This document shows, piece after piece, positions 1 to 13,183 of a stretch of DNA of 64,000 nucleotides. Position 1 is the stretch's first letter, and each line of letters opens with the position of its first letter. Position numbers and translations under genes: made by a program. The stretch lies in the NCBI GenBank assembly GCA_033442325.1, contig JAWQFM010000033.1, positions 475,029 through 539,028 on the forward strand, given 5' to 3'. The notes under the pieces are model-generated. The model ran no database searches and had not been told where the DNA came from. It was given only the letters and a program-made list of their open reading frames with translations. This DNA comes from Salpingoeca rosetta. Taxonomy: Eukaryota; Protista; Choanoflagellata.

Positions 1-150
1 ACCGAGGGAACCGCAACGTGGCTGCAGCAGCTGCTGCTGCTCACAAGGCGCCACCACCACAGTCGTCATCATCATCGTCATCATCGCGACCAACAGCATC
101 GGCGCCCCCACGCCCGCCAGTGGCAGAAGAGGAGGTGTGCCTTGTGTGTC

Positions 151-200
<50 letters not shown>

Positions 201-558
201 GTGTGTGCGTGTGCGTGTGTGTGTTTGAGCCTGTACAGTGTGTGTTGACACACACCCCTCTTCATCCTACTTCTGCAACCCACTTCTCCTGCCCCTCACT
301 TCTTCACCTCCCTTCTTCGACACGTTCTGTTGTTGAAGCCGGATGCGTACGTGGACATGATGAACGTTGCCGAGGTGAAACTGGAGGCATGCGAGATTGT
401 GCAACAGCACCAAGAGACAAAACAACATCAAGTGAGTAATGATATGATTCACGCAGAAAAGGTCAATCATGCCGCCGTGTATGTTTCGTGTCCTGTCATG
501 CATTCTCTGACATAACTGCCCGTGTGTGTGTGTGTGTGTGTGTGTGCGTGCGTGTGCG

Positions 559-589
<31 letters not shown>

Positions 590-1424
590 TGCTCTGTTTC
601 GCAGAGTGCACCAACGCAACAGCGAGTGGAGCGGATCGACGAAGAAAAGAATGAGGTGTGCAAGCCTTGACCATGCACAACGCATCACTAATCCCGGCAC
701 TGTTAATGCTTGAGTAGTTGTGGGCAATCTCCCTCACCATTTCCGTCATTGTCGCCATCAACGTGTTGTTACTGCTCTGAACTGAATGGCAGCAGGAGTA
801 CATGGACTTGACGGGTTTCATTGAAGTACCGCTGGAGACAGTGAAGGAACCAACGACCACAGAAACGAAGGTGAGGCTTCTCACATGAACTTGTTGCAGG
901 GATTGACTTGATGTGCATCATCATTGCTTGCTTTTGCTTACTTGTGCTTGCTTTTGCTTACTTGTGCTTGCTTGTTGTTACCTTGCATGTTGTTACCTTG
1001 CTTGTTGTTACCTTGCTTGCTTTTGCTTGCTTGGGGGTGGCGTGTCGTCACTGATTCGCCCTCTGCTATCGCCTGTTGTTGTCCGCATCTGCCTTGTAGG
1101 TTGTTGCCGTTGAAGGGCACACTGCATCTTCGCAACGCTCGGCACAAGCAAGCACACCAGACCAGGTACGTCGCCAACACAGCGAAGAGGTCACGGTGGT
1201 AGGGAGGGTGAACCGTGCAGGAGGTGTTCAGGTGCGACGCTTCCCCCCGTTTGTAACCGGCGTCGGCATCCGCACAACTTCACACCACACGTGGCACGTT
1301 GGCTTTGGGTGTGGCATTGCTGCAGGGCTCTGGGAGGATTGCAAAAGAGGAGGACGAGGAGGAAGGCGTGCCTGCTGAGGAACGCACATACCTTGAACCC
1401 ATCGCACAGCTCATTTCAATGTGA
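1..1424 (+). CDS. 3' end of a spliced gene (partial); acidic low-complexity C-terminus with three tyrosine motifs, probably a pTyr-signalling receptor tail or adaptor
   Basis: Phase-0 GT-AG exons <1-134, 339-431, 605-655, 793-870, 1100-1165 and 1326-1424 join in frame: ...EEEPDAYVDMM...EKNEQEYMDLT...EERTYLEPIAQLISM*. Confidence 0.6.
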
Positions 1425-2073
1425 TGATCATCTACAATGTATGTGTGTGTTGCATGTATGCATGTGTGTGTTTGCGTGTGCATGTGTGGGAGTGTGTGTG
1501 TCACGGGGTGGCCCGTGGAACGGAGTCAACACACACAGCAAGACGTGCTTTTCATGTCGTGTGCTTTTGAGGCATGTTGATGAAGAAGTAAAGGCACACC
1601 GTTGGCACGCGCCAGTCAGATTGAAGGATTGAAAGACAAGCAACACGGCAACGTTCACAATATCCAAACGTCTCCTCTCCTCACAGGCTCACAAGCACAA
1701 AAGCACACACACACACACGCATGTGCACACACACATACACACACACACATGTGCACACACATGCACACATGTGCACACACACACACACACACATGTGCAC
1801 ACACACACACATACACACATGTCATACACATTCCCCACCAACTCGAGTTGTTGGCGGCGCGGCTGGCCTTGGAAAGATTTTCGGTACAACAACACCACGC
1901 CCATTCACAAAGAACCTAAGAACCACGCTCTTTCCAAGAAGCAAGAAAGCGTGGAAATTCACGGTTGTGCCAGCAGCTACAGCAATCAACAGGAATCACG
2001 CCACGAAACCTGCCCCAGTTCAAGCAGCATGTTGACCGAGCCATACCTCAACACGCCATTTTCCTCCTCTTTA

Positions 2074-3040
2074 TCACCCCTCCTCCCTGGCTAAGCGAAT
2101 GAGCATGTTCGCGTGCCCTTTCTTCGCACCAGCTGCAATGAGGTCCTTCTTCGTTAAGTCCCCGTCAATCACAAGCTCCACAAGATCTTGCAGCGTGGAA
2201 ATGCCGTGGTCGATCAACACACTCTTCACGTGTACAAGGAGACCGTGTCGCTGTAGCCAGTTCGCAAGGTCGGAATTGAAGAGGTCTTCATCCATTACAC
2301 TGGCATCTGGAGTTGGAGTTGATGTCGGCAAGTGTGGAAAGAACGCAGCAAACTTTTCAGCCAAACACCGAGACGTTACGCGGTGGCGATCAACCCATAT
2401 GCCAGCGCTGTACTGTTGCTGGACTGAGTCAAAGTGCAACAGCGTGTCTTCGTCGTATGGAAGAAACAACTGCACGTGCAAGTCACCATATCGACGTGCC
2501 ATGGCCTGGTTGATGGTTTCATGAAGTTGATCCAAGAACATGCGTGGTTCAGGACCATCAATCCAAACTTTGATGCCGCCAACAGCAGGAACAAGCCGCA
2601 GCTCCACTCTCGAATCTGCTGCGAAGATAACGACATGGGTACGGCTGAGCTTTGGCTCTCGCGTAGCTGTTGGTTGCGTGCGCTGCAGCACGTGTGCGAG
2701 CAACATGGTGAAGATGCCTTCAGGCAGGAAGGTTGTGCGCTGAAGGGCATCTATGCTCACGTCGGCATTTGCACTCGGCTGTGCAGGTCCAGCGATGAAG
2801 CTGATGTACGCCGTGTTCGGCTCATGTCCGAGATACGAGTGAAATCGCTGGGCCACAGTTGTGCTCAATACCACAGAAGATGACATCGACGACGCCTCAT
2901 CAGCACTTGTCGGAGAGGCTGGAGCTGTTGATGATGTCGGTGAAGTCAGTGGAGTTGGTGATGGGTCAAGGGTCATGGGCAGGATCGCCGGCACGAGGTA
3001 GCATTCCTCCTCCTCCTGCTCCTGCTTCTGCTCCTGCTCC

Positions 3041-3115
<75 letters not shown>

Positions 3116-4069
3116 GCCAGGACATGCTTTGGAGCACCCCCGTTTCGTGCCACCCTTGGGAGTGTGTATTGCACACACAATCCATATTCCATCATCAAGC
3201 GCAAGAACGGCTCAACCAGGTCACATTGCATATCCCTCCACAGCACCTCCAGCACTTGGCGGTGCAGGATGCCACGAAGGACCAGATCGTCCCATAAGTG
3301 GGCACCCAGCCTAATTGCTTCTTGGTCGTGAACATCGCTGTGGAGGTCGAAGTTGCGGATGACACTTGTCATCGTGTCTACCGCCCACTGGGGGCTCAAG
3401 ATGACGAAGGCATCCATACCGTCGATGTCATCATAGTACAGCACCATAGAATACAGGTGCAGATACTTCAGACACATCCTCGTGTCCATCTTGTTTTGCA
3501 GGCCAAACTTTTTGCGACCAATATCTGTGGCTTCTGCGAGTGTAACAAAGGGCCTGTGAGATGCTCTGTGCATGCTCATCAACTCGTCGTAGAGGCGAAT
3601 GTACGACACAGCTATTTCTCGGCTCACAAACGGCTGCGCCAGTGCTGTGAAGGAGATGGTCTGGCGCAGGTCCTGGATCATGGGGTCATCGATGGACTTG
3701 GTGTTGTCAATGGGCCAAAACCATAGGCCGTGCTTGTCGTTGTGGATGACAGAAGGGAAGGCCGGGTTGTACCGGAATCGCTTGAAGAGTTGTTCAGACA
3801 CCTGGTGATGTTGTCTTGGGGATGCCACCACGTCAGCAAATGTGCCAATGATGAGGACGGGTGCGCCCTTGGCGTGGAGGTGGAGGGAGGAAAGCCAATA
3901 CTCAATAAACTCCCAGGTAGCCTCGCGTTTCTCGTCATCTGGGTGCAACAAGCTCTCCATGGAGAATACCAGGAGGTACACCGCATACCTGTTGTGGGGG
4001 CGAACGTGGGAAGTAGTGGGGTGAGGGGTGTGTGGAGTAGGTTGAAACAGAATGAGGTGGACAGCACGC

Positions 4070-4124
<55 letters not shown>

Positions 4125-5171
4125 GCACAGACACACAGACACACACAGACACACACAGACACACACAGAAGCACAGACACACACACACACCAAAAGGAAT
4201 CTAATGGCTCACTCTGTGAGGAAGAAAGGGTGGAAGATGTAGAAGGTGGACTGGCCACCCAGGTCAAAGACCTTGAACGTGACCCGCGCTTTGCCTTGAG
4301 CAATTGTCATGTCAAGGTTCACATCTTTGATGGCCCGTTCAAGATCCTCTCGACTTGTTGAAGTCGTGGCAGCCTCATTGACCACGCCATCTGGGTCTGG
4401 AACTGGGTCTGTCTCGTCATGCAAGGGTGGGTCTGTGGGTTGAGCTATCGTGGAACCGGTTTGTGGCGCTAGCTTGCTTGCAGGATTTGTAGGTGGAACC
4501 GGAAGTCTTCGATGCCGTCTTGAAGTTGTTGGACCTGGTTTTTGCCGTTGTTGTTGCAACCGTGACCGCTGCTGCCGCTCTTGGGTTGCTTTCATCATCT
4601 CTTTCTTCAGTGTTGCCGCAATACCCGAAGTCCTTGCCAGTGCCGTATCTCGTAGGGTGCGCATGTACTCGGACGTGCCTGGCTCGACACTCTGTGGCGC
4701 GATGTTCAAGATGGAGGTGGAGCGGAACATGCAGAACGAGGGTCAAGGGACCAAACAGCGGTGTGAGGATAAGCAAACAAACACCGGCACTTATCCACAT
4801 GCGCACAGCCTCCCCGATGTCCTTGCATGCACGCAAGCACCGCAGAGGAAGCACACAGTTGCTTGCGCGTATTTGCACCAGGCTATCACTATCACGACCA
4901 CACCTGCCAATCACAGACGTCCATTGTTTCGACCGTGACATCCAAGTTCACACCATCCGCACCACGCGTGGAGTTGTGAACTGGATTAAACGTCTCGGCC
5001 ATCAACGAGCGCAGCGTCGTTGTTTTGCCTGCACCTCCTTCTCCGACAATCATGAGCTTCGCACGTGCTGCCATCTGCGTTTGGGACTGTGCAGAAATCT
5101 CGAGCATGTGCCGAATGACTTCATTTTGGTATTTGAGCCGGGCCTGTTGGGTTTGAGGACATGTTACACAC

Positions 5172-5207
<36 letters not shown>

Positions 5208-6085
5208 GGAGAGGAAAGCAACAGAATCGATCAACATTGCCCTTTTCGACACCCACTCACAGGGATGCACTGTCACACTTTTCCTCATTGGAAACCCACA
5301 TCATTGCTGTTCGCTGGGCGCAAGTCCTCGAGACTAATAATGTCGATGTGGCCCCGGATTGCAGCTTCATCATAAGCGGTCTCCTCCTGCAAATTTGAGA
5401 GAGGATGCGACCACGCATACGGACGGTCACTGGATGAAACCATTCACATGGTAAGGGGCAGTACAATGATGTTGCATGGAATGAGAGCACATCGCATGTA
5501 TACAGTCTCTTGGAAGAATCAACTCACATTTGCGTTAGTAGCAGTGATATCTGCGCCATTTTCAAGCAACAGCGAAACAATGGCCACTTGATTGTGCTTG
5601 CAAGCAAAATGAAGCGGTGTGTCGTCCTGAGCGTGCACGGTGAGTGTGGTTGACAATGAAATGGCGTTGGTTAAGCCAAGAGGGCCGCAGACAATCTTGC
5701 ACAATGTAAAGAAAGCAACGGCTACGCAGTTACACACACACACACACGCACAACGCCGACACATACTTGTTCGTTCTGTTCATTGATGACAGTGTTGTTT
5801 TGCTTGATTAGGGTGCTTGCGGCCTCAAGGTTGCCATGCTTGCACGCGGAGAAAAACTCTTGTTGTTGTCGCCTCTTCTCGTCTCGTCCTTGGTTGAAGG
5901 CTACCCGTTCCTCAGACGTCCTGATGGAATAAAAGGAGACGAGGCAAAGTTGTACAAAATGTACGCGCACGAAGTAATGTGAGCATCCAGTCGCATACAC
6001 CATGACCACGCCCGAGCAGGCATAGTGAACGGCGACCACACGCACACGCACACGCACACGCACACGCACACACACACACACACAT

Positions 6086-6118
<33 letters not shown>

Positions 6119-8022
6119 TGCATGCATGAGCAGGAGCACGCGCACCCAACCTCAGACGCTGAGCTTGGTGCAGACTCACCAATTACCCGTGTCGATGCGT
6201 CGGTTCACTGGCAGTGCCGCCCCAAAGGCACGAGCGGCCTGGGAAGAGTTGTGGTGGATGCTGCATGTTGGTGGTGTGCAGGCATTCACGTTAAATCAGA
6301 ACTCCCATTTCAGACATGCACCATGACTCTCGTGTGTCCAGACATTACGGGGATAAAGGAGGAGAGGACGGAAGTTGTGTCACATGTACGCACAGAAGTC
6401 CTTCAAGGGTGCGATTCTTGCGCAATGCTCCTCCAAAGGCAGCTCCACCACTTGTACCAATGTCATTGTTGGACAAACTGCATGACGGCAAAGATGTATA
6501 TGATATGTAAATGAAGAAGAGGCACGGCAAGGAAGTGACCATGACACGACGTGAGCCAGACTCACCTCAATCTTGACAGCCATGAATTGTGTCGCAACAT
6601 TTCCGCCAATGCTCCCGCCGCAGCGGGGCCGAGGTCATTTTCCCAAACCCTTCGGGTCAAACGATTGGTGTGGTGTGACGTGTAAGCAAGCATGTGTGTG
6701 TGTGTGTGTGATTTCAGCGCAATTGAAATCGAGTTCGCACAGCATTGGTTGCAGGTTGCAGTTTGTGTCTTGCATCTTCAGTCCCGAGGTGAGTCTTTCC
6801 AACGTTCCGAGCAAGCTATGACCAGGGTGTCGTGCACTTACCATATTCTGTTCAGAGTGGTGTTGTCATGCGCAAGCGCGGCTGCGAGAGAACGGACGCC
6901 TTCATCACCCATGCGGTTCTTCCCAAGACTGATGCATCGTTTGGGCGAAAAGACGGAAAACACATGAGCAACCCGCGACAACACCATACAGTGCCTCATT
7001 TTCATGGCAATGTAGCAGGGACCGCGTGACAAAACCAGCGGTTACACTGTTGTGTTACACACGGTTGCATAGGAAGACGTGCACCAAATCGTGGCCAGAC
7101 CATGAACAAACTCACTTCAGGTCCACAATGCAGGTGTTGTGTCTTAACATGTCTGCCAAGGCTGCAGCGCCGTCAGGCCCAATAGCGTTGCGAGACAGCC
7201 TGGGTAGCAGGGCAGACAAGCGGATCAAGGACCAATGAGGTAGTTGTTGCTCAGTGTATCCACGAGTGGCACAGGGACTGGTTACATCAGCACATGCAAC
7301 TGCTAGCACATCGTCTTTGTCTCAACCAACGCACCAGAGAACCTTCACGCTGTTGTTGCGCTTGAGCATATCTGCCAAGGCCACTGTGCCCTCAGGGCCA
7401 ATGGAGTTGTCATCCAACCTGGTGTCAGCCGCAAGACCACGCGCCATCAGCGGCAACGATACACAGAGACTCAAGGTTAAGCGCGGATGAGGGTTGCCCA
7501 AAAAGCTGTGTGAATGCCAAGCAATCAAGCGAGCCAGCTTGTGAACCAAACAGAAGTTAACAAAGCAAGGCCCTTTGTGCTTGTGAGCTCACACCTCACC
7601 AAAGTTGCTTCACCGTCTTGTTGTTTTCCAGTACATCTGCCAAGGCGGCCGCACCGACAGCGCCAATTGAATTGCGTTGCAAACTGTGACATGAACGCAG
7701 CGTAGTACCAGTTACAGAGTCATCACAGATCACAATCCGATGCGGTGAGTGCAAGATGATGAGCAGCGGAGATAACCATGCTGGCTAGCACCTGAGGAGG
7801 TGTGAAACGACCACCGCATGCTTCACGAACACCAACGATCCCTTCAACTGACTGTAGCTCTTGAAGTGAGGTGTTGCCTCTCAATGCCTCGGCAAGCGCA
7901 CTCGCTCCATTATCGTCGAGTCCAGCATCTCCCATTCTTTATTAGAGCGGGGGGGGGGGGGGAGAGTGTGTGTGTTGTGAGCGAGCGAGCGTGTGTGTGT
8001 GTGTGTGTATGTGTGTGTGTGT

Positions 8023-8096
<74 letters not shown>

Positions 8097-8519
8097 CGCA
8101 AGACTGCATGGTGGACGCACATACAGAATTCAGTTGCACACCGACACACCTACACACCTACAGACAAACACACCCCGACTCGACACAGACAAACACACAC
8201 ACACACACAAACCTATGCATACACACACACACACATACACACACATACATACAAACACACACGCATACACACACACACACACGCTCGCGCGCGTGAAAGC
8301 ACATGGTTGTTTGGCACCTTTTCAGCATTCCAAACAGAAACACCTCTACACCTGCAACACTTCTTTGCAACAGTAACAGTAGGGTACTCACCTCACAAAC
8401 TCTCCATAGGTGTTGGTGGCGATGTGTCTGATTTTTCGTTTCACCGAATCCTCCAACCTCGTCTTTGCTAAGAACGCTTCCACCTTCTCGAGCACTGTTG
8501 GCGTCGACGTTGTCGTCAT
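2074..8519 (-). CDS. ROCO family protein: RNI-like LRRs + ankyrin repeats + ROC GTPase + COR + C-terminal SAM-like domain, no kinase
   Basis: Exons 8519-8392, 7936-7853, 7683-7600, 7418-7335, 7199-7116, 6928-6842, 6649-6566, 6477-6394, 6260-6180, 5920-5767, 5626-5528, 5386-5300, 5143-4904, 4691-4213 and 3988-2074 splice in frame. LRR consensus LxxNxIGxxGAxALAxxLxxNxxLxxL. Ankyrin DTPLHFACKHNQVAIVSLLLENGAD. ROC motifs G1 GEGGAGKTT, G2 STRG, G3 VFDLGGQ, G4 IIGTFAD. COR-like ILSPQW and YLVPAILP. SAM-like LANWLQRHGL...AGAKKGHANML. Confidence 0.9.
3041..3115 (-). repeat. (CAA)n coding polyglutamine tract inside the COR region
   Basis: (TTG)n on the + strand, read as poly-Q in ORF 2074..4188. Confidence 0.9.
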
Positions 8520-8903
8520 CGTGACGCAGTTGGTGCCCCCTGCACACACACAGCACCGCAGCACTACAGCAGCTATGCAGCTTGCTTGTTGTCCGTGGTC
8601 CTGCGTTGTTTTCTGTTTTGATGGTGGTCCTGTGGCGGTGTATTGCGGAAAATTGAACGCCCTCACGAAAGCTATTCGGCTGGTTTTGTTTGTGTTTTTG
8701 TTTATTGCCACGCGATCATGGAACCCCATGATGCGTGAACCGCACTCAGACTCAAGGCATCAATGAATACGTGCATGACTCCGCATGTGTGTGTATGTGT
8801 GTGTATGTATATGTGTGTATGTGTACATGCGTGCACCCGGGTTCTCTCCTCACTCCGCCCCCAACTGGTAAGTGACACTCAAGTAAGCAAGTCAGTAAGT
8901 ACA

Positions 8904-8961
<58 letters not shown>

Positions 8962-9179
8962 AGCAACGCAAGCAAGCAGTGAAACACAAATTGTGCACGG
9001 GTGAGCGGAATGTCTGAACCCTTGAACCAGTCACAGGTGCACTTGCACGCATGCGCGTCCTTCTAAAGTTCTTGCTACAGCGTGTCACAGACACCGCCAC
9101 AACCACCGCAGCACCACAACTTGCTCCTCTAGTTCGTCCGCTCATTCGCTCACTCGCTACGCTTCTGAGTTACGGGCGA

Positions 9180-11542
9180 TCAACGCCCATGTGACGTCTG
9201 CAGCCCATTCACAAAGCAAACGGAACACGATGTGAATGTGAGCCGAGTGATACCATGGAACGCATGGCGCGCACACATGATGGCGAAATCAACGCTCACA
9301 GCATCAACACGCACGAGCCCCCCACACCCACACCCACACTCACACACGCACACACACGCACACACACACACCCACCCACACGCACGCACGCACGCACGCA
9401 CACACACACGCACGCAGCACGCACACACACGCACACACACACACACACACGCACACACACACACACGCACACACACACGCACGCACGCACACACACACAC
9501 ACACACGCACGCCCAGTCCCATCCACCACAAAACAGCTCACCCTGCGTCTGCCGAAAAACACGCCAGTAAACCTGCGGCGTCGTCGTGGTGATTGCCCTT
9601 CCTCCTCCTGCTCCTGCACTTGTTGTTGGTGTTGGGTCTGTTTTGGCGACTTCGGAGCGCTTTCTTCAGCCACCGGCACTGGTGTTGTCATCATGGCCAT
9701 GGCCGCTGAATCCACATCCACATCACCACCACCACCACGACGTGGCTGCATGTTAACAGCAGCTGTTGCACGACGCCGCCGACCACCATCACTACCCGTA
9801 CCATCAGTGGCCACGTGCAGGCGCGGCTGGCGGTATCTGCGATGATCATCATCGTCTTCGAGGTCGCGACCGCAAACACCAGCATCACCAGCATCTACAC
9901 TGCCAGCACGGCGGCGGAGGCGGCCACGACGACCAGACGCATCCACGTCTCTTGTTGCTGCTGCTGTTGTTGCTGTTGTTGCCGTTGTGACACAGCCACG
10001 TGCAGCATGCCTGCCCCTGTCTTCCTCACTGTGCATCTGCTTGTTGTTGTCGTCGTTCTCGTCACTGGCACTGCTACTGCTGCCGCTGCCCCGCTTGCGC
10101 ACAACAGCACCATCGCGATCACCACCACCACCATCAACAACCGCAGTATCAACAGCGGCACAGTCAGCGTTCATCCCAACGACACCCTCCTGTCTCTCCT
10201 GTCTCTCCTCCACTTCCTCCTCGTCCTCCTCCTCGTCGAACACGAGTGCAAACGCGTCGCTGCTCATATGCGTGTGCGTGGACGTGGCACTTGATCTGCG
10301 CACCGCTTCCTGCAGATCTGTCGCGTTCTTAAACACGGACTGCCGGCGCAACCGACCGGTAATTGGGTGCGACGACGACGATGACGACGACAACGACGAT
10401 GACGGGCCCCTGTGCCGTGTGCCTTGATCCAACGACAATGCACGCCTTCGCCCACCACCACCACCACTGCTGTCGGTCATGCCAAAGCTGGTGTGGACAG
10501 CACCGTCTGGGTGTGGCTGTGATCCGCAGGCGTCAAGGTGGTGCTGATGCAAGGCATCGCGGGCGAAGGCGATGGACGGTTCATGACCAGCGGCTGTTGC
10601 TCGCCGTTGCTTCTTCTTCTTCTTCTTCACCATCATCTGCTGTTGTTTCCGTTGCTTCTTCTCTTCCTTCTTTGCTTGCTTTGCCTGTTTCTTGCTCACC
10701 TCCCGTGCACTGTCGGTACCAGTACCACTGCTGCCAGCGCTGCTGTTCCTGCTGCCTTCCAATGGGCTCATGCTCGTTGTGTTTTGCCTGCCCTTCCTTC
10801 CCTTATTCTTCTTGTTCTTCTTCCACACGCGGTTTCGCCAGAACGCACCCAGCGATCCGCGTCGGCGTCCAGGCGTCGCCTCACCACCATCATCTTCGCC
10901 AACATCATCATCATCATCATCGTCGTCAACCTCATCGTCAACCTCATTGGCGTGTCCAGCAGCATTGGCAGCTAGTGTCGTTGTAGCTGTTGTTGTCGCT
11001 GCCACTGCTGTTACCGCTGCCGTGGTTGTCGTTTCATGCTGTGTGCTTGCATCGCCTGCTTCTCTTCCCATTCCTCTGGCACGCCCAGCTTCAACATGTT
11101 TGCGTGATTGCACCACATCTTCTGCCTCAGTGTCTGTCATCGTTTCCACCAGCTGCACACGCACGACAACACCGGCGTTCTCAGCACCTCCGCTGCCCTT
11201 CTGCTGCTGCTGATGCTGTTGCTGATGCTGTCGTTGTTGTTGTTGAAAGTCTTTGCTGCCTTCGCGGCTGCTCTGTGCCTCCTCCGTGTCCACATCCGGA
11301 ATGTCTGCCAGCTGTGTTCGGTTTCGCCACTCGCGCTGTCGCTGTTCGTTGCGGGGGCGTGACACCTGCTCAAACACGTCGCGCGGAGACTCTGGCGTGC
11401 GAACACCGTGGCGGCGGTGGCGGCGATGTGGACTCAGCTTCCGCCCGCGTCGCGCTGATGGCGACGACGACGACGACGCTGTTGGCGAGAATGACGGCGA
11501 CGGGGAGGGTGATGTGGATGCAGAGCCGGGTTGCATATGTGC

Positions 11543-11603
<61 letters not shown>

Positions 11604-13183
11604 CCTGTTGTGGCTGATGCTAGTTGCGATGACGATGATCTTGGTGTTGCTGTTGTTGTTGCTGTTGCTGGGATTGCGATGGTCAAGCCACTTCCTCCAT
11701 GTGCTGCAGAAGGTGCTGCTGTGATTGCAGCGACGTCATCATCAGCGTCGTATGCACCGCCATCGTTACCACCAGCAGTCAAGGCAGTGGTGCTTGCATT
11801 GCGGGAGTTCCCACCGCCAAACGTTGCGCTGGTCACAGTGGTGTCGTGCACATCCTCAACACTGTCATCGCCATCATCACGATCATTCCCATCACCGCGA
11901 ATGCCGTCACTGCTATCATAGTCGTCGTCGTCGCCGTAGTCATAGCAGTCATCATCGGTGGTGGAGATGCCGCCAGCGGTGCTGTCGCTCGCTGGATATG
12001 AGGCAGCAGATGACAGCGACGTGAAACTGTCCTGCCGCACACCAGATGGTGAATGCTGCTGCTGCTGCTGCTGCGACGACTGGTGGCGATGGTGACGGTG
12101 ACGGCGGGCATCGGTGTTGAAGTCAGCACCAAAGAATGCGCGCGAGGGCAGCGATGCTGATGGTGATGCATCACTGTGGGACTGGCGATGGCGGCGGCGA
12201 CGGCGGCTGCCTGGCGAGGAACCACGACGAACGTCGAGCGACACGGCGGATGAAGCAGCCGATGCGGAGCCTGGCGTCGTTTCAAAGTCGGAGGACACCA
12301 ACGATGTCCGTCGCGAGTCAGACTGCGTTTCAGATGCAAACATGTTGCTGCTGGCCCGCGAACCCCGCAGACGAAAGTCAACGCCGCACGAGCTAGCCCA
12401 GCTCTGCATGGAGTCTGTTGATGGCTGCTGCTCCAGCATTTGCCCATCATCACCATCGTCATCACCATCCTCACCATGGCTGGCACTGTCTTGGTCATGC
12501 CTGTGGCGGTGCGGGTGGTGTCGCACGGTGCTGTCAGCGTTGTCGTTGGTCGTGCTGTCAGTGTGGTGGGTGTGTTCCGCGAGTGCGGGTGTTGGTGTAG
12601 CGGAGCCACGGTCATCAGCAGCCGACGTGGGCCGTGAGGGCTGTAGCGTTGGCGATGGCGAAACCGCCTCCACAGTGATGTTGAACGATCCCCGATCCGT
12701 CTGCACAGACATGCGCGTGTTCTGCAGCAAGTCGACCGCTGCGAGCGGCTCCGTTCTGCTTCGGTGATGGGAAGCTGAAATGTGTTGGAAGGGGTGATGG
12801 GGATATGCGTTGGAAGGGGGTGATGGGGATGTGTTGGACAGGTGTAAGTACACGTGAGCACGGGTAGGTGAGTGATGTGATATGTGTGTGCGTGCGCGTG
12901 TGTTTATGTGCATGTGCATGTATGTGTATGTGTGCAAATGTGTCACGCGTGCATCAGGCATATTCACATGCGCGTGAACATTCGAGACAAACACAGTTGA
13001 GTGGTATGACTCACCCAATGGCTCTGCCATTTCGTACACGTCCTCCTGGTCGCTACTGCAGCAGCGAGAGACATGCGACAACAGGGCAAAAGATGTGCAC
13101 AGTCAACAAGGGATGGAACGTGTACGCTCATGGCAGGTAAGAGGCAAAGTGTCGCGTCGCACACACACACACACACGCACACA

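What the first reader, a model, noticed from the sequence alone, without database searches (positions are those of the whole stretch)
6180..7936. ROCO GTPase whose LRR sensor is built one repeat per symmetric exon: candidate shufflable or alternatively spliced receptor
Seen: eight consecutive exons of 84, 84, 84, 84, 87, 84, 84 and 81 nt. Each encodes one RNI-type LRR (the last is degenerate), and all are flanked by phase-2 introns at the same position in the repeat, so any subset can be skipped, duplicated or swapped without a frameshift. One ankyrin repeat is likewise a single 99-nt phase-0 exon (5626-5528). Established: exon-per-LRR architecture with exon shuffling was described for brown-algal (Ectocarpus) LRR-ROCO genes proposed as pathogen receptors, and RNI/NLRC3-type LRRs in animals show similar exon modularity. 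Inference: this may be a diversifying innate-immune or bacteria-sensing receptor system in a bacterivorous unicellular holozoan.
Basis: partly seen in the sequence, partly recalled or inferred. Interest (0 to 1): 0.75.

Follow-up and report, generated by a model that had tools for sequence, protein, structure and literature searches.

The report
Old one-repeat-per-exon LRR array, choanoflagellate ROCO
The eight 81-87-base exons are real and each codes one leucine-rich repeat of a Salpingoeca rosetta LRR-ankyrin-Roc-COR-SAM GTPase, but in this gene the array is old and shows no sign of recent exon duplication; the fast-changing cassettes are in its paralogues.

Summary
Observation confirmed exactly. 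A minus-strand gene (window 8519-2074, 15 GT-AG exons, 1257-aa model) has eight consecutive exons of 84, 84, 84, 84, 87, 84, 84 and 81 nt. Each is one RI-like LRR, and all are flanked by phase-2 introns at the same repeat position. The 99-nt phase-0 ankyrin exon is also real.

The genome is Salpingoeca rosetta. The protein is LRR-Ank-Roc-COR-SAM, with no kinase, no TIR and no NACHT.

The "diversifying, shufflable receptor" reading is not supported for this gene:
- Its LRR exons are only 45-65% identical in DNA and its introns are unrelated.
- There are no stray LRR copies and no close paralogue.
- It pairs with PTSG_05682 outside the young expansion of the family, and the two arrays are colinear.

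The same tests on paralogue PTSG_10661 give 79-96% identical exons and near-identical introns, so cassette duplication is detectable where it exists. Exon skipping would keep the frame: none of 45 forward joins makes a stop. I could reach no transcript data.

The scan has already reported this exon-cassette ROCO family on other DNA of this genome. The design is known from brown-algal ROCO genes and from NLRC5, an animal NLRC gene. Verdict: an ordinary, stable member of an interesting family.

The parts
8392..8519 (-). Exon 0: start codon and a conserved N-terminal segment of about 42 residues, ending in a phase-2 intron
   Evidence: The N-terminus aligns with those of paralogues PTSG_10661 and PTSG_05682.
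7853..7936 (-). LRR exon 1 (84 nt), the N-terminal cap-type repeat
   Evidence: Pfam LRR_6 E 0.098 for the exon alone.
7600..7683 (-). LRR exon 2 (84 nt)
7335..7418 (-). LRR exon 3 (84 nt)
7116..7199 (-). LRR exon 4 (84 nt)
   Evidence: Pfam LRR_6 E 0.0066.
6842..6928 (-). LRR exon 5 (87 nt, 29-residue repeat). This length variant is shared with PTSG_05682 and PTSG_11903.
   Evidence: Pfam LRR_6 E 0.016.
6566..6649 (-). LRR exon 6 (84 nt)
6394..6477 (-). LRR exon 7 (84 nt), the family's penultimate-type repeat
   Evidence: Pfam LRR_6 E 0.091.
6180..6260 (-). LRR exon 8 (81 nt), the conserved terminal unit of the family, not a decayed repeat
   Evidence: It is 61% identical to the terminal units of P0030 and P0007.
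5767..5920 (-). Exon 9: linker and first ankyrin-like repeat. It enters in phase 2 and leaves in phase 0.
   Evidence: Pfam Ank_4 E 0.024.
5528..5626 (-). Exon 10: one ankyrin repeat, 99 nt, phase 0 at both ends
   Evidence: Pfam Ank E 5.3e-10, 39.4 bits.
5300..5386 (-). Exon 11 (87 nt, phase 0 at both ends), the tail of the ankyrin region
   Evidence: No Pfam hit on its own.
4904..5143 (-). Exon 12: start of the Roc GTPase domain, with the P-loop GEGGAGKT
   Evidence: Pfam Roc E 2.6e-7, 31.3 bits against a cut-off of 27.
4213..4691 (-). Exon 13: low-complexity insert of about 130 residues in Roc, then the G3 motif DLGGQ
   Evidence: Pfam Roc E 0.012 for positions 44-78 of the model.
2074..3988 (-). 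Exon 14: end of Roc, COR-A, a poly-Q linker, COR-B, a C-terminal SAM domain and the stop codon
   Evidence: COR-A E 1.3e-11, COR-B E 5.2e-5 and SAM_2 E 4.8e-4. The reading frame is open over 708 residues.

Best explanation
This is an intact gene of the choanoflagellate Salpingoeca rosetta for a cytosolic ROCO GTPase with the layout N-terminal segment, eight RI-like LRRs, ankyrin repeats, Roc, COR-A/B and SAM.

The one-repeat-per-exon layout is a trait of the whole S. rosetta LRR-Ank-Roc-COR family. Each exon is 84 nt, and a phase-2 intron splits the x5 codon of the LxxLxLxxN strand. This gene inherited that layout. The layout is not a sign of current diversification here.

The gene and its sister PTSG_05682 form an old lineage without a TIR domain. 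It lies outside the young expansion, which contains the TIR-bearing members examined. The LRR array of this lineage has a fixed order: cap, inner repeats, one 87-nt repeat, a penultimate repeat and a conserved 81-nt terminal unit.

Inferred mechanism, from what is known of ROCO proteins: the LRR solenoid binds a fixed partner or holds the protein autoinhibited. Roc-COR works as a nucleotide-dependent dimerisation switch. The SAM domain links the protein to partners, possibly to TIR-bearing paralogues that carry the same SAM.

The gene anatomy, domains, family placement and age of the array are shown. Ligand binding, GTPase cycling and SAM-mediated assembly are inferred.
For: - Exon anatomy and phases.
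- Domains.
- Organism: S. rosetta PTSG proteins match other loci of the same assembly at 99-100%, and family hits are 41-50% identical to this gene.
- Family size: at least 38 Roc-COR loci in the assembly.
- Old array: exon-exon DNA identity is 45-65%. The seven introns (169, 181, 135, 187, 192, 88, 133 nt) show at most weak similarity to each other (z -1.4 to 4.8). There are no extra or reversed LRR copies. The only DNA-level matches elsewhere are 79-86% over 42-68 nt.
- Positive control: in PTSG_10661 the inner exons are 79-96% identical and introns 2-5 align with z 59-97.
- Tree: this gene pairs with PTSG_05682 (SH-aLRT 100), outside a short-branched clade of 27.
- Colinearity with the sister: both share the 87-nt unit and the terminal unit, and the sister has one more inner repeat.
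- Repeat variability: young-clade cassettes vary almost only at x2, x3, x5, x7 and x8 (2.2-3.5 bits against 1.45 or less elsewhere). This gene varies at nearly all non-structural positions.
- Position: 477-483 kb from the start of contig C33 and at least 56 kb from its end.
Against: - I saw no transcript evidence for this gene. No protein identical to its big exon was returned at 389-2051 aa, so expression and the exact splicing are predicted, not observed.
- The pairing with PTSG_05682 joins two long branches and could be partly an attraction artefact.
- With only seven comparable repeats, the entropy comparison is coarse.
- An old array does not exclude regulated exon skipping.
- The SAM match barely passes Pfam's cut-off (20.7 against 20.5 bits). 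COR-B is below its cut-off.
Confidence: 0.75

Rival explanations
1. The LRR exons of this gene are alternatively spliced cassettes. Skipping subsets gives receptor isoforms with different solenoid lengths and new residues at the split x5 codon, as reported for Ectocarpus ROCO genes.
For: All nine junctions from exon 0 to exon 9 are phase 2. All 45 forward joins, 36 of them skips, keep the frame and create no stop, and many change the junction residue. There is a precedent in brown algae (PMC11378527).
Against: There is no transcript evidence either way. All exons have ordinary GT-AG sites. The two paralogues with annotated 'variant' isoforms differ by N-terminal truncation, not by internal cassette skipping. 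The conserved order of specialised cap, 87-nt, penultimate and terminal units in the sister gene argues for a constitutive array.
Confidence: 0.15
2. This gene is itself an actively diversifying pathogen or bacteria receptor that evolves by exon shuffling.
For: It belongs to a family whose young members show duplicated cassettes, near-identical introns and variability at the ligand face. LRR number differs among paralogues in steps of 28 residues. An S. rosetta TIR domain produced cADPR when expressed in bacteria (bioRxiv 10.64898/2026.04.20.719644). This fits an immune-like role for TIR-bearing S. rosetta proteins; which protein was tested was not checked.
Against: Its own exons and introns are diverged. 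It has no stray cassettes and no close paralogue. It has a long private branch and sits outside the young clade. It has no TIR effector. It lies inside the contig rather than near its start, whereas many paralogues are within 100 kb of a contig start.
Confidence: 0.07
3. The locus is a silent or decaying family member, an unexpressed relic.
For: No matching protein was found in the protein collection at 389-2051 aa. Long microsatellites fill several introns.
Against: The 1257-codon frame is open across 15 exons with 14 canonical GT-AG introns. The P-loop and DxxG motifs are intact. The family-specific N-terminal and terminal LRR units are conserved.
Confidence: 0.05

Closest known systems
Brown-algal (Ectocarpus, Saccharina) LRR-ROCO genes with exon shuffling (Zambounis 2012, PMC3341825; Teng 2024, PMC11378527)
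   Same: LRR in front of Roc-COR, one LRR per exon, all introns phase 2 so exons are symmetric, and a large lineage-specific family.
   Different: Exons there are 72 nt (24-residue 'type I' LRR). Here they are 84 nt (28-residue RI-like LRR). Brown-algal genes lack the ankyrin and SAM parts. Brown-algal arrays carry noncoding LRR copies in introns and show recent shuffling and alternative splicing. This gene shows none of the first two, and the third is untested.
Animal NLRC-type LRR domains, e.g. human NLRC5 (PMC3848420)
   Same: RI-like 28-29-residue repeats, mostly one per exon. Exons begin at position 6 of the repeat consensus, the same register as here (split x5 codon, first full codon L6).
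   Different: The central NTPase is NACHT, not Roc-COR. The intron phase in NLRC5 was not checked here. Common descent of the cassette is not shown.
S. rosetta PTSG_05682 (P0030), sister paralogue
   Same: Same LRR-Ank-Roc-COR-SAM layout without TIR. Its array is colinear and includes the 87-nt exon and the terminal 81-nt unit. Its exons are diverged and its introns unrelated.
   Different: 45-49% protein identity, and nine LRR units instead of eight (one more inner repeat).
S. rosetta PTSG_10661 (P0007) and other young-clade paralogues
   Same: Same N-terminal segment, cap, penultimate and terminal LRR units, ankyrin, Roc-COR and SAM, with the same 84-nt phase-2 exons.
   Different: They carry a TIR between COR and SAM. 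In PTSG_10661 the inner cassettes are 79-96% identical in DNA with near-identical introns. Across the young clade, inner-cassette variation is confined to the ligand-face positions.
Human ROCO proteins MFHAS1/MASL1 (LRR-Roc-COR), LRRK2 and DAPK1 (from my own knowledge and PMC4104024)
   Same: A Roc-COR tandem preceded by repeat domains (LRR, ankyrin).
   Different: This gene has no kinase or death domain. Its LRR precedes its ankyrin repeats, the reverse of LRRK2. It ends in SAM.

Membership tests
ROCO proteins | Roc (Ras-like) GTPase domain with a P-loop | tested here: met
   Pfam Roc 31.3 bits against a cut-off of 27 on exon 12 alone. GEGGAGKT and DLGGQ are present in the model.
ROCO proteins | COR domain directly C-terminal to Roc | tested here: met
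   COR-A 45 bits against a cut-off of 35.3. COR-B 23.5 bits, below its cut-off of 27.
ROCO proteins | GTP binding, and hydrolysis that depends on dimerisation | not testable with these tools
   Needs biochemistry.
RI-like (RNI-type) LRR class | Repeats of 28-29 residues with LxxLxLxxNxIGxxGAxxLAxxLxxN | tested here: met
   Alignment A1; unit steps of 28, 28, 28, 28, 29, 28, 28 residues.
RI-like (RNI-type) LRR class | Pfam LRR_6 above its gathering score | tested here: inconclusive
   Single exons score 13-17 bits against 23.4, because each exon holds only profile positions 10-24. The joined array was not submitted. The colinear sister P0030 scores 83.9 bits.
Exon-shuffling LRR-ROCO receptors (brown-algal type) | One LRR per exon, with symmetric same-phase introns | tested here: met
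Exon-shuffling LRR-ROCO receptors (brown-algal type) | 72-nt exon coding a 24-residue type I LRR | tested here: not met
   Exons are 81-87 nt and code RI-like repeats.
Exon-shuffling LRR-ROCO receptors (brown-algal type) | Recent exon duplication or exchange: near-identical exons or introns, or noncoding LRR copies in introns | tested here: not met
   Exons 45-65% identical with unrelated introns. No stray copies. No close paralogue. The same test is positive in PTSG_10661.
Exon-shuffling LRR-ROCO receptors (brown-algal type) | LRR exon number varies among paralogues | tested here: met
   At family level only. DNA-checked arrays have 8 (this gene), 9 (PTSG_05682, two of the nine from the annotated protein) and 8 (PTSG_10661) units. 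Annotated proteins have 4-9 units, and some are truncated models.
Exon-shuffling LRR-ROCO receptors (brown-algal type) | Diversifying selection on the concave face | tested here: inconclusive
   Only column entropies could be computed. They are focused on x2, x3, x5, x7 and x8 in young-clade cassettes and diffuse in this gene. No dN/dS was possible because no close homologue exists.
Exon-shuffling LRR-ROCO receptors (brown-algal type) | Alternative splicing of LRR exons | not testable with these tools
   No transcript data were reachable. Annotated variants of two paralogues are N-terminal truncations.
NLR (NACHT or NB-ARC plus LRR) receptors | Central STAND NTPase (NACHT or NB-ARC) | tested here: not met
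   Only sub-threshold P-loop matches to nSTAND or AAA models. The best family is Roc.

The most novel reading that the evidence does not exclude
This gene and PTSG_05682 may be the conserved, TIR-less 'helper' or ancestral members of a choanoflagellate ROCO receptor family. They could pair through the shared SAM domain with the fast-evolving TIR-bearing paralogues, like sensor/helper NLR pairs. The 84-nt RI-like LRR cassette has its intron in the same repeat register as animal NLRC5. It may therefore be one ancient holozoan exon module that was moved between Roc-COR and NACHT scaffolds.
Probability: 0.12. Interest if true: 0.7.

Novelty: new member of a known kind. Interest (0 to 1): 0.33.

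Why it matters
On its own, this gene is a stable member of the family and adds little. Its value is as a reference point. It and its sister show what the S. rosetta LRR-Roc-COR array looks like when it is not being reshuffled. That gives an internal control for claims of cassette diversification in the younger paralogues, at least some of which carry TIR domains.

The family-level picture is of interest for the origin of animal innate immune receptors. It comprises one RI-like repeat per 84-nt phase-2 exon, the same register as NLRC5, and variability at the ligand face in the young clade. I found no paper describing this in a choanoflagellate. The scan has, however, already reported the family several times on other DNA of this genome.

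Tried and rejected
I used annotated paralogue proteins and two loci from the public assembly instead.
- I looked for this gene's own annotated or transcript-derived protein. Nothing identical was returned at 389-1239 aa or 645-2051 aa. The model is 1257 aa, so the first search could not have seen it. The second could have.
- Related contigs from other organisms (L037 from a Logan run, L038 from a TARA metagenome) start at Roc or later and carry no LRR region. The exon layout could not be compared across species.
- A telomere-repeat scan, meant to place the gene relative to the chromosome end, listed only the first contigs and never reached C33.
- The pseudogene reading is unlikely because the frame is open and all splice sites are canonical.
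- NLR membership is rejected because there is no NACHT or NB-ARC.
- The joined spliced protein was not sent to Pfam, the homologue searches or structure prediction. Exons were searched one by one by reference. The joined translation was built only inside scripts, for local comparison with fetched proteins.

Full report
**Anatomy**

The finding lies in a minus-strand gene. An enumeration of open AG...GT segments and a complete model give 15 exons from the ATG at 8519 to the stop at 2074. There are 14 GT-AG introns and 3774 coding bases, which translate to 1257 residues. Exons 1-8 are 7936-7853, 7683-7600, 7418-7335, 7199-7116, 6928-6842, 6649-6566, 6477-6394 and 6260-6180.

Every one of these exons, and the exons on either side of them, is joined through a phase-2 intron. 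In the repeat, the intron always splits the codon of x5 in LxxLxLxxN. Each exon is therefore a circularly permuted repeat: it ends with L1-x2-x3-L4 of the next strand and begins with L6-x7-x8-N9.

The scans are more than a chance pattern. A six-frame HMM scan of window 1-12000 finds these eight units and nothing else on either strand. A splice-bounded scan of the whole window finds no further LRR exon.

The ankyrin exon 5626-5528 is 99 nt, phase 0, with Pfam Ank E 5.3e-10.

**Domains**

The exons were searched one by one by reference. The joined protein was not submitted to any database tool or to structure prediction. It was assembled only inside scripts for local comparisons.

- Single LRR exons give weak LRR_6 matches (E 0.0066-0.098), because each exon holds only profile positions 10-24.
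- Roc passes its cut-off on exon 12 alone (31.3 bits).
- COR-A passes on the last exon (45 bits).
- COR-B is sub-threshold (23.5 bits), and a C-terminal SAM_2 just passes (20.7 against 20.5 bits).
- There is no kinase, TIR, NACHT or death domain.

The layout is N-terminal segment, 8 LRR, ankyrin, Roc (with a low-complexity insert of about 130 residues in exon 13), COR-A, poly-Q, COR-B, SAM.

**Organism and family**

The big exon finds Salpingoeca rosetta PTSG proteins at 41-50% identity. A profile search returns about 30 S. rosetta paralogues. Those annotated proteins match other loci of the window's assembly at 99-100%, so the genome is S. rosetta. The window is contig C33:475029-539028.

The Roc-end/COR exon has at least 38 paralogous loci in the assembly. 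No protein identical to this gene was returned at 389-2051 aa, so I have no annotation or transcript for it.

**Is this array being reshuffled?**

Within the gene, the LRR exons are 45-65% identical in DNA. The seven introns (169, 181, 135, 187, 192, 88, 133 nt) show at most weak similarity to each other (z -1.4 to 4.8 against shuffles). The whole LRR region has no close copy elsewhere in the genome. The only matches are 79-86% over 42-68 nt, to another family member on C34.

As a positive control I ran the same tests on paralogue PTSG_10661 (locus L036). Its inner exons are 79-96% identical, and introns 2-5 align with z 59-97. The sister gene PTSG_05682 (L035) behaves like the present gene. 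The test therefore detects recent cassette duplication where it exists, and it is absent here.

**Placement**

A maximum-likelihood tree of the Roc-end/COR exon pairs this gene with PTSG_05682 (SH-aLRT 100; both branches are long, 0.66 and 0.99). The pair sits outside a clade of 27 short-branched paralogues.

The two proteins are colinear from the N-terminus to the SAM domain, and both lack the roughly 280-residue stretch, with a weak Pfam TIR_2 match in PTSG_10661, that some other paralogues carry between COR and SAM. Their LRR arrays have the same order:

- a cap unit;
- inner units;
- one 87-nt unit with the same one-residue insertion;
- one further unit;
- the penultimate unit;
- the 81-nt terminal unit.

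PTSG_05682 has one more inner unit, nine against eight. The terminal unit is 61% identical to those of PTSG_05682 and PTSG_10661, so it is a conserved capping unit rather than a degenerate repeat.

**Where the variation sits**

In 41 inner cassettes of young-clade paralogues, column entropy is 2.2-3.5 bits at x2, x3, x5, x7 and x8 and at most 1.45 bits elsewhere. That is the expected picture for a hypervariable concave face. In this gene's seven canonical repeats, variation is spread over nearly all non-structural positions. With seven repeats this is a coarse measure. No dN/dS was possible because no close homologue exists.

**Splicing**

All 45 forward joins among exons 0-9 keep the frame and create no stop. 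Only joins back onto exon 1 would give TGA.

I could not reach transcript data. In two paralogues that have annotated 'variant' isoforms, the variants are N-terminal truncations and not internal cassette skips.

**Comparison with what is known**

Brown-algal ROCO genes have one 24-residue LRR per 72-nt phase-2 exon, with shuffling, positive selection on the concave face and alternative splicing (PMC3341825; PMC11378527). Human NLRC5 has RI-like repeats whose exons start at position 6 of the repeat consensus (PMC3848420), the same register as here. I found no paper describing this layout in a choanoflagellate. A 2026 preprint reports a cADPR-producing TIR from S. rosetta. That may bear on the TIR-bearing paralogues, although I did not check which protein was tested, and it does not bear on this TIR-less gene.

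Earlier notes of this scan describe the same family on other DNA of this genome, with both hypervariable and old, stable arrays. My own tests agree with that division and place this gene in the stable group.

**Verdict**

The gene is a new, stable member of a known kind. The diversifying-receptor interpretation applies to its paralogues, not to it. Alternative splicing remains open.

Noticed in passing
window 7945-8100, 6020-6120, 5170-5210, 4000-4190: Long (GT)n/(CA)n microsatellites fill parts of several introns of this gene. The largest lies in the 455-nt first intron, just upstream of LRR exon 1.
   Followed up: no
window about 3037-3114 (minus strand): A run of about 26 glutamine codons, followed by an acidic stretch, lies between COR-A and COR-B in the last exon. 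Paralogues have a shorter Q run at the same place (consensus).
   Followed up: no
window 4213-4691 (minus strand): The Roc domain is interrupted between the P-loop/switch I part and the DLGGQ motif by a low-complexity insert of about 130 residues, coded in exon 13. The family consensus shows a comparable insert.
   Followed up: partly
window 2074-8519: No protein identical to this gene's 637-residue last exon was returned by two homologue searches that together covered 389-2051 aa. The gene may be unannotated, split or missing in the public S. rosetta annotation.
   Followed up: partly
L002-L004 (G000:C34:402157-405680): This is another family member, with an N-terminal segment, at least eight 84-nt LRR exons, an 81-nt terminal exon and then ankyrin. 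A run of N (assembly gap or withheld stretch) lies inside its LRR array. It did not appear among the scored Roc-COR hits, so the family is larger than 38 loci.
   Followed up: partly
G000 contigs C30:18-82 kb, C4:36-77 kb, C26:19 kb, C35:39 kb, C36:40 kb, C12:4 kb: Many paralogues lie within 100 kb of a contig start, and three sit together on C30. Telomere repeats occur at C5:4.2 kb and C23:2 kb, so at least some contig starts are chromosome ends. This gene (C33:477-483 kb) and its sister (C13:1.247 Mb) are far from a contig start.
   Followed up: partly
L014:3446-3529 (G000:C30, about 82.0 kb): An 84-nt LRR exon lies downstream of a COR exon. Its translation is identical to an internal unit of PTSG_13066 (P0003), whose annotated protein ends in that unit. 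It is either a stray cassette or a merged gene model.
   Followed up: no
proteins P0007-P0032: UniRef names most family members 'non-specific serine/threonine protein kinase'. No kinase domain appears in their Pfam lists or in my scans of P0007 and P0030. This is probably a name carried over from LRRK-type ROCO proteins.
   Followed up: partly
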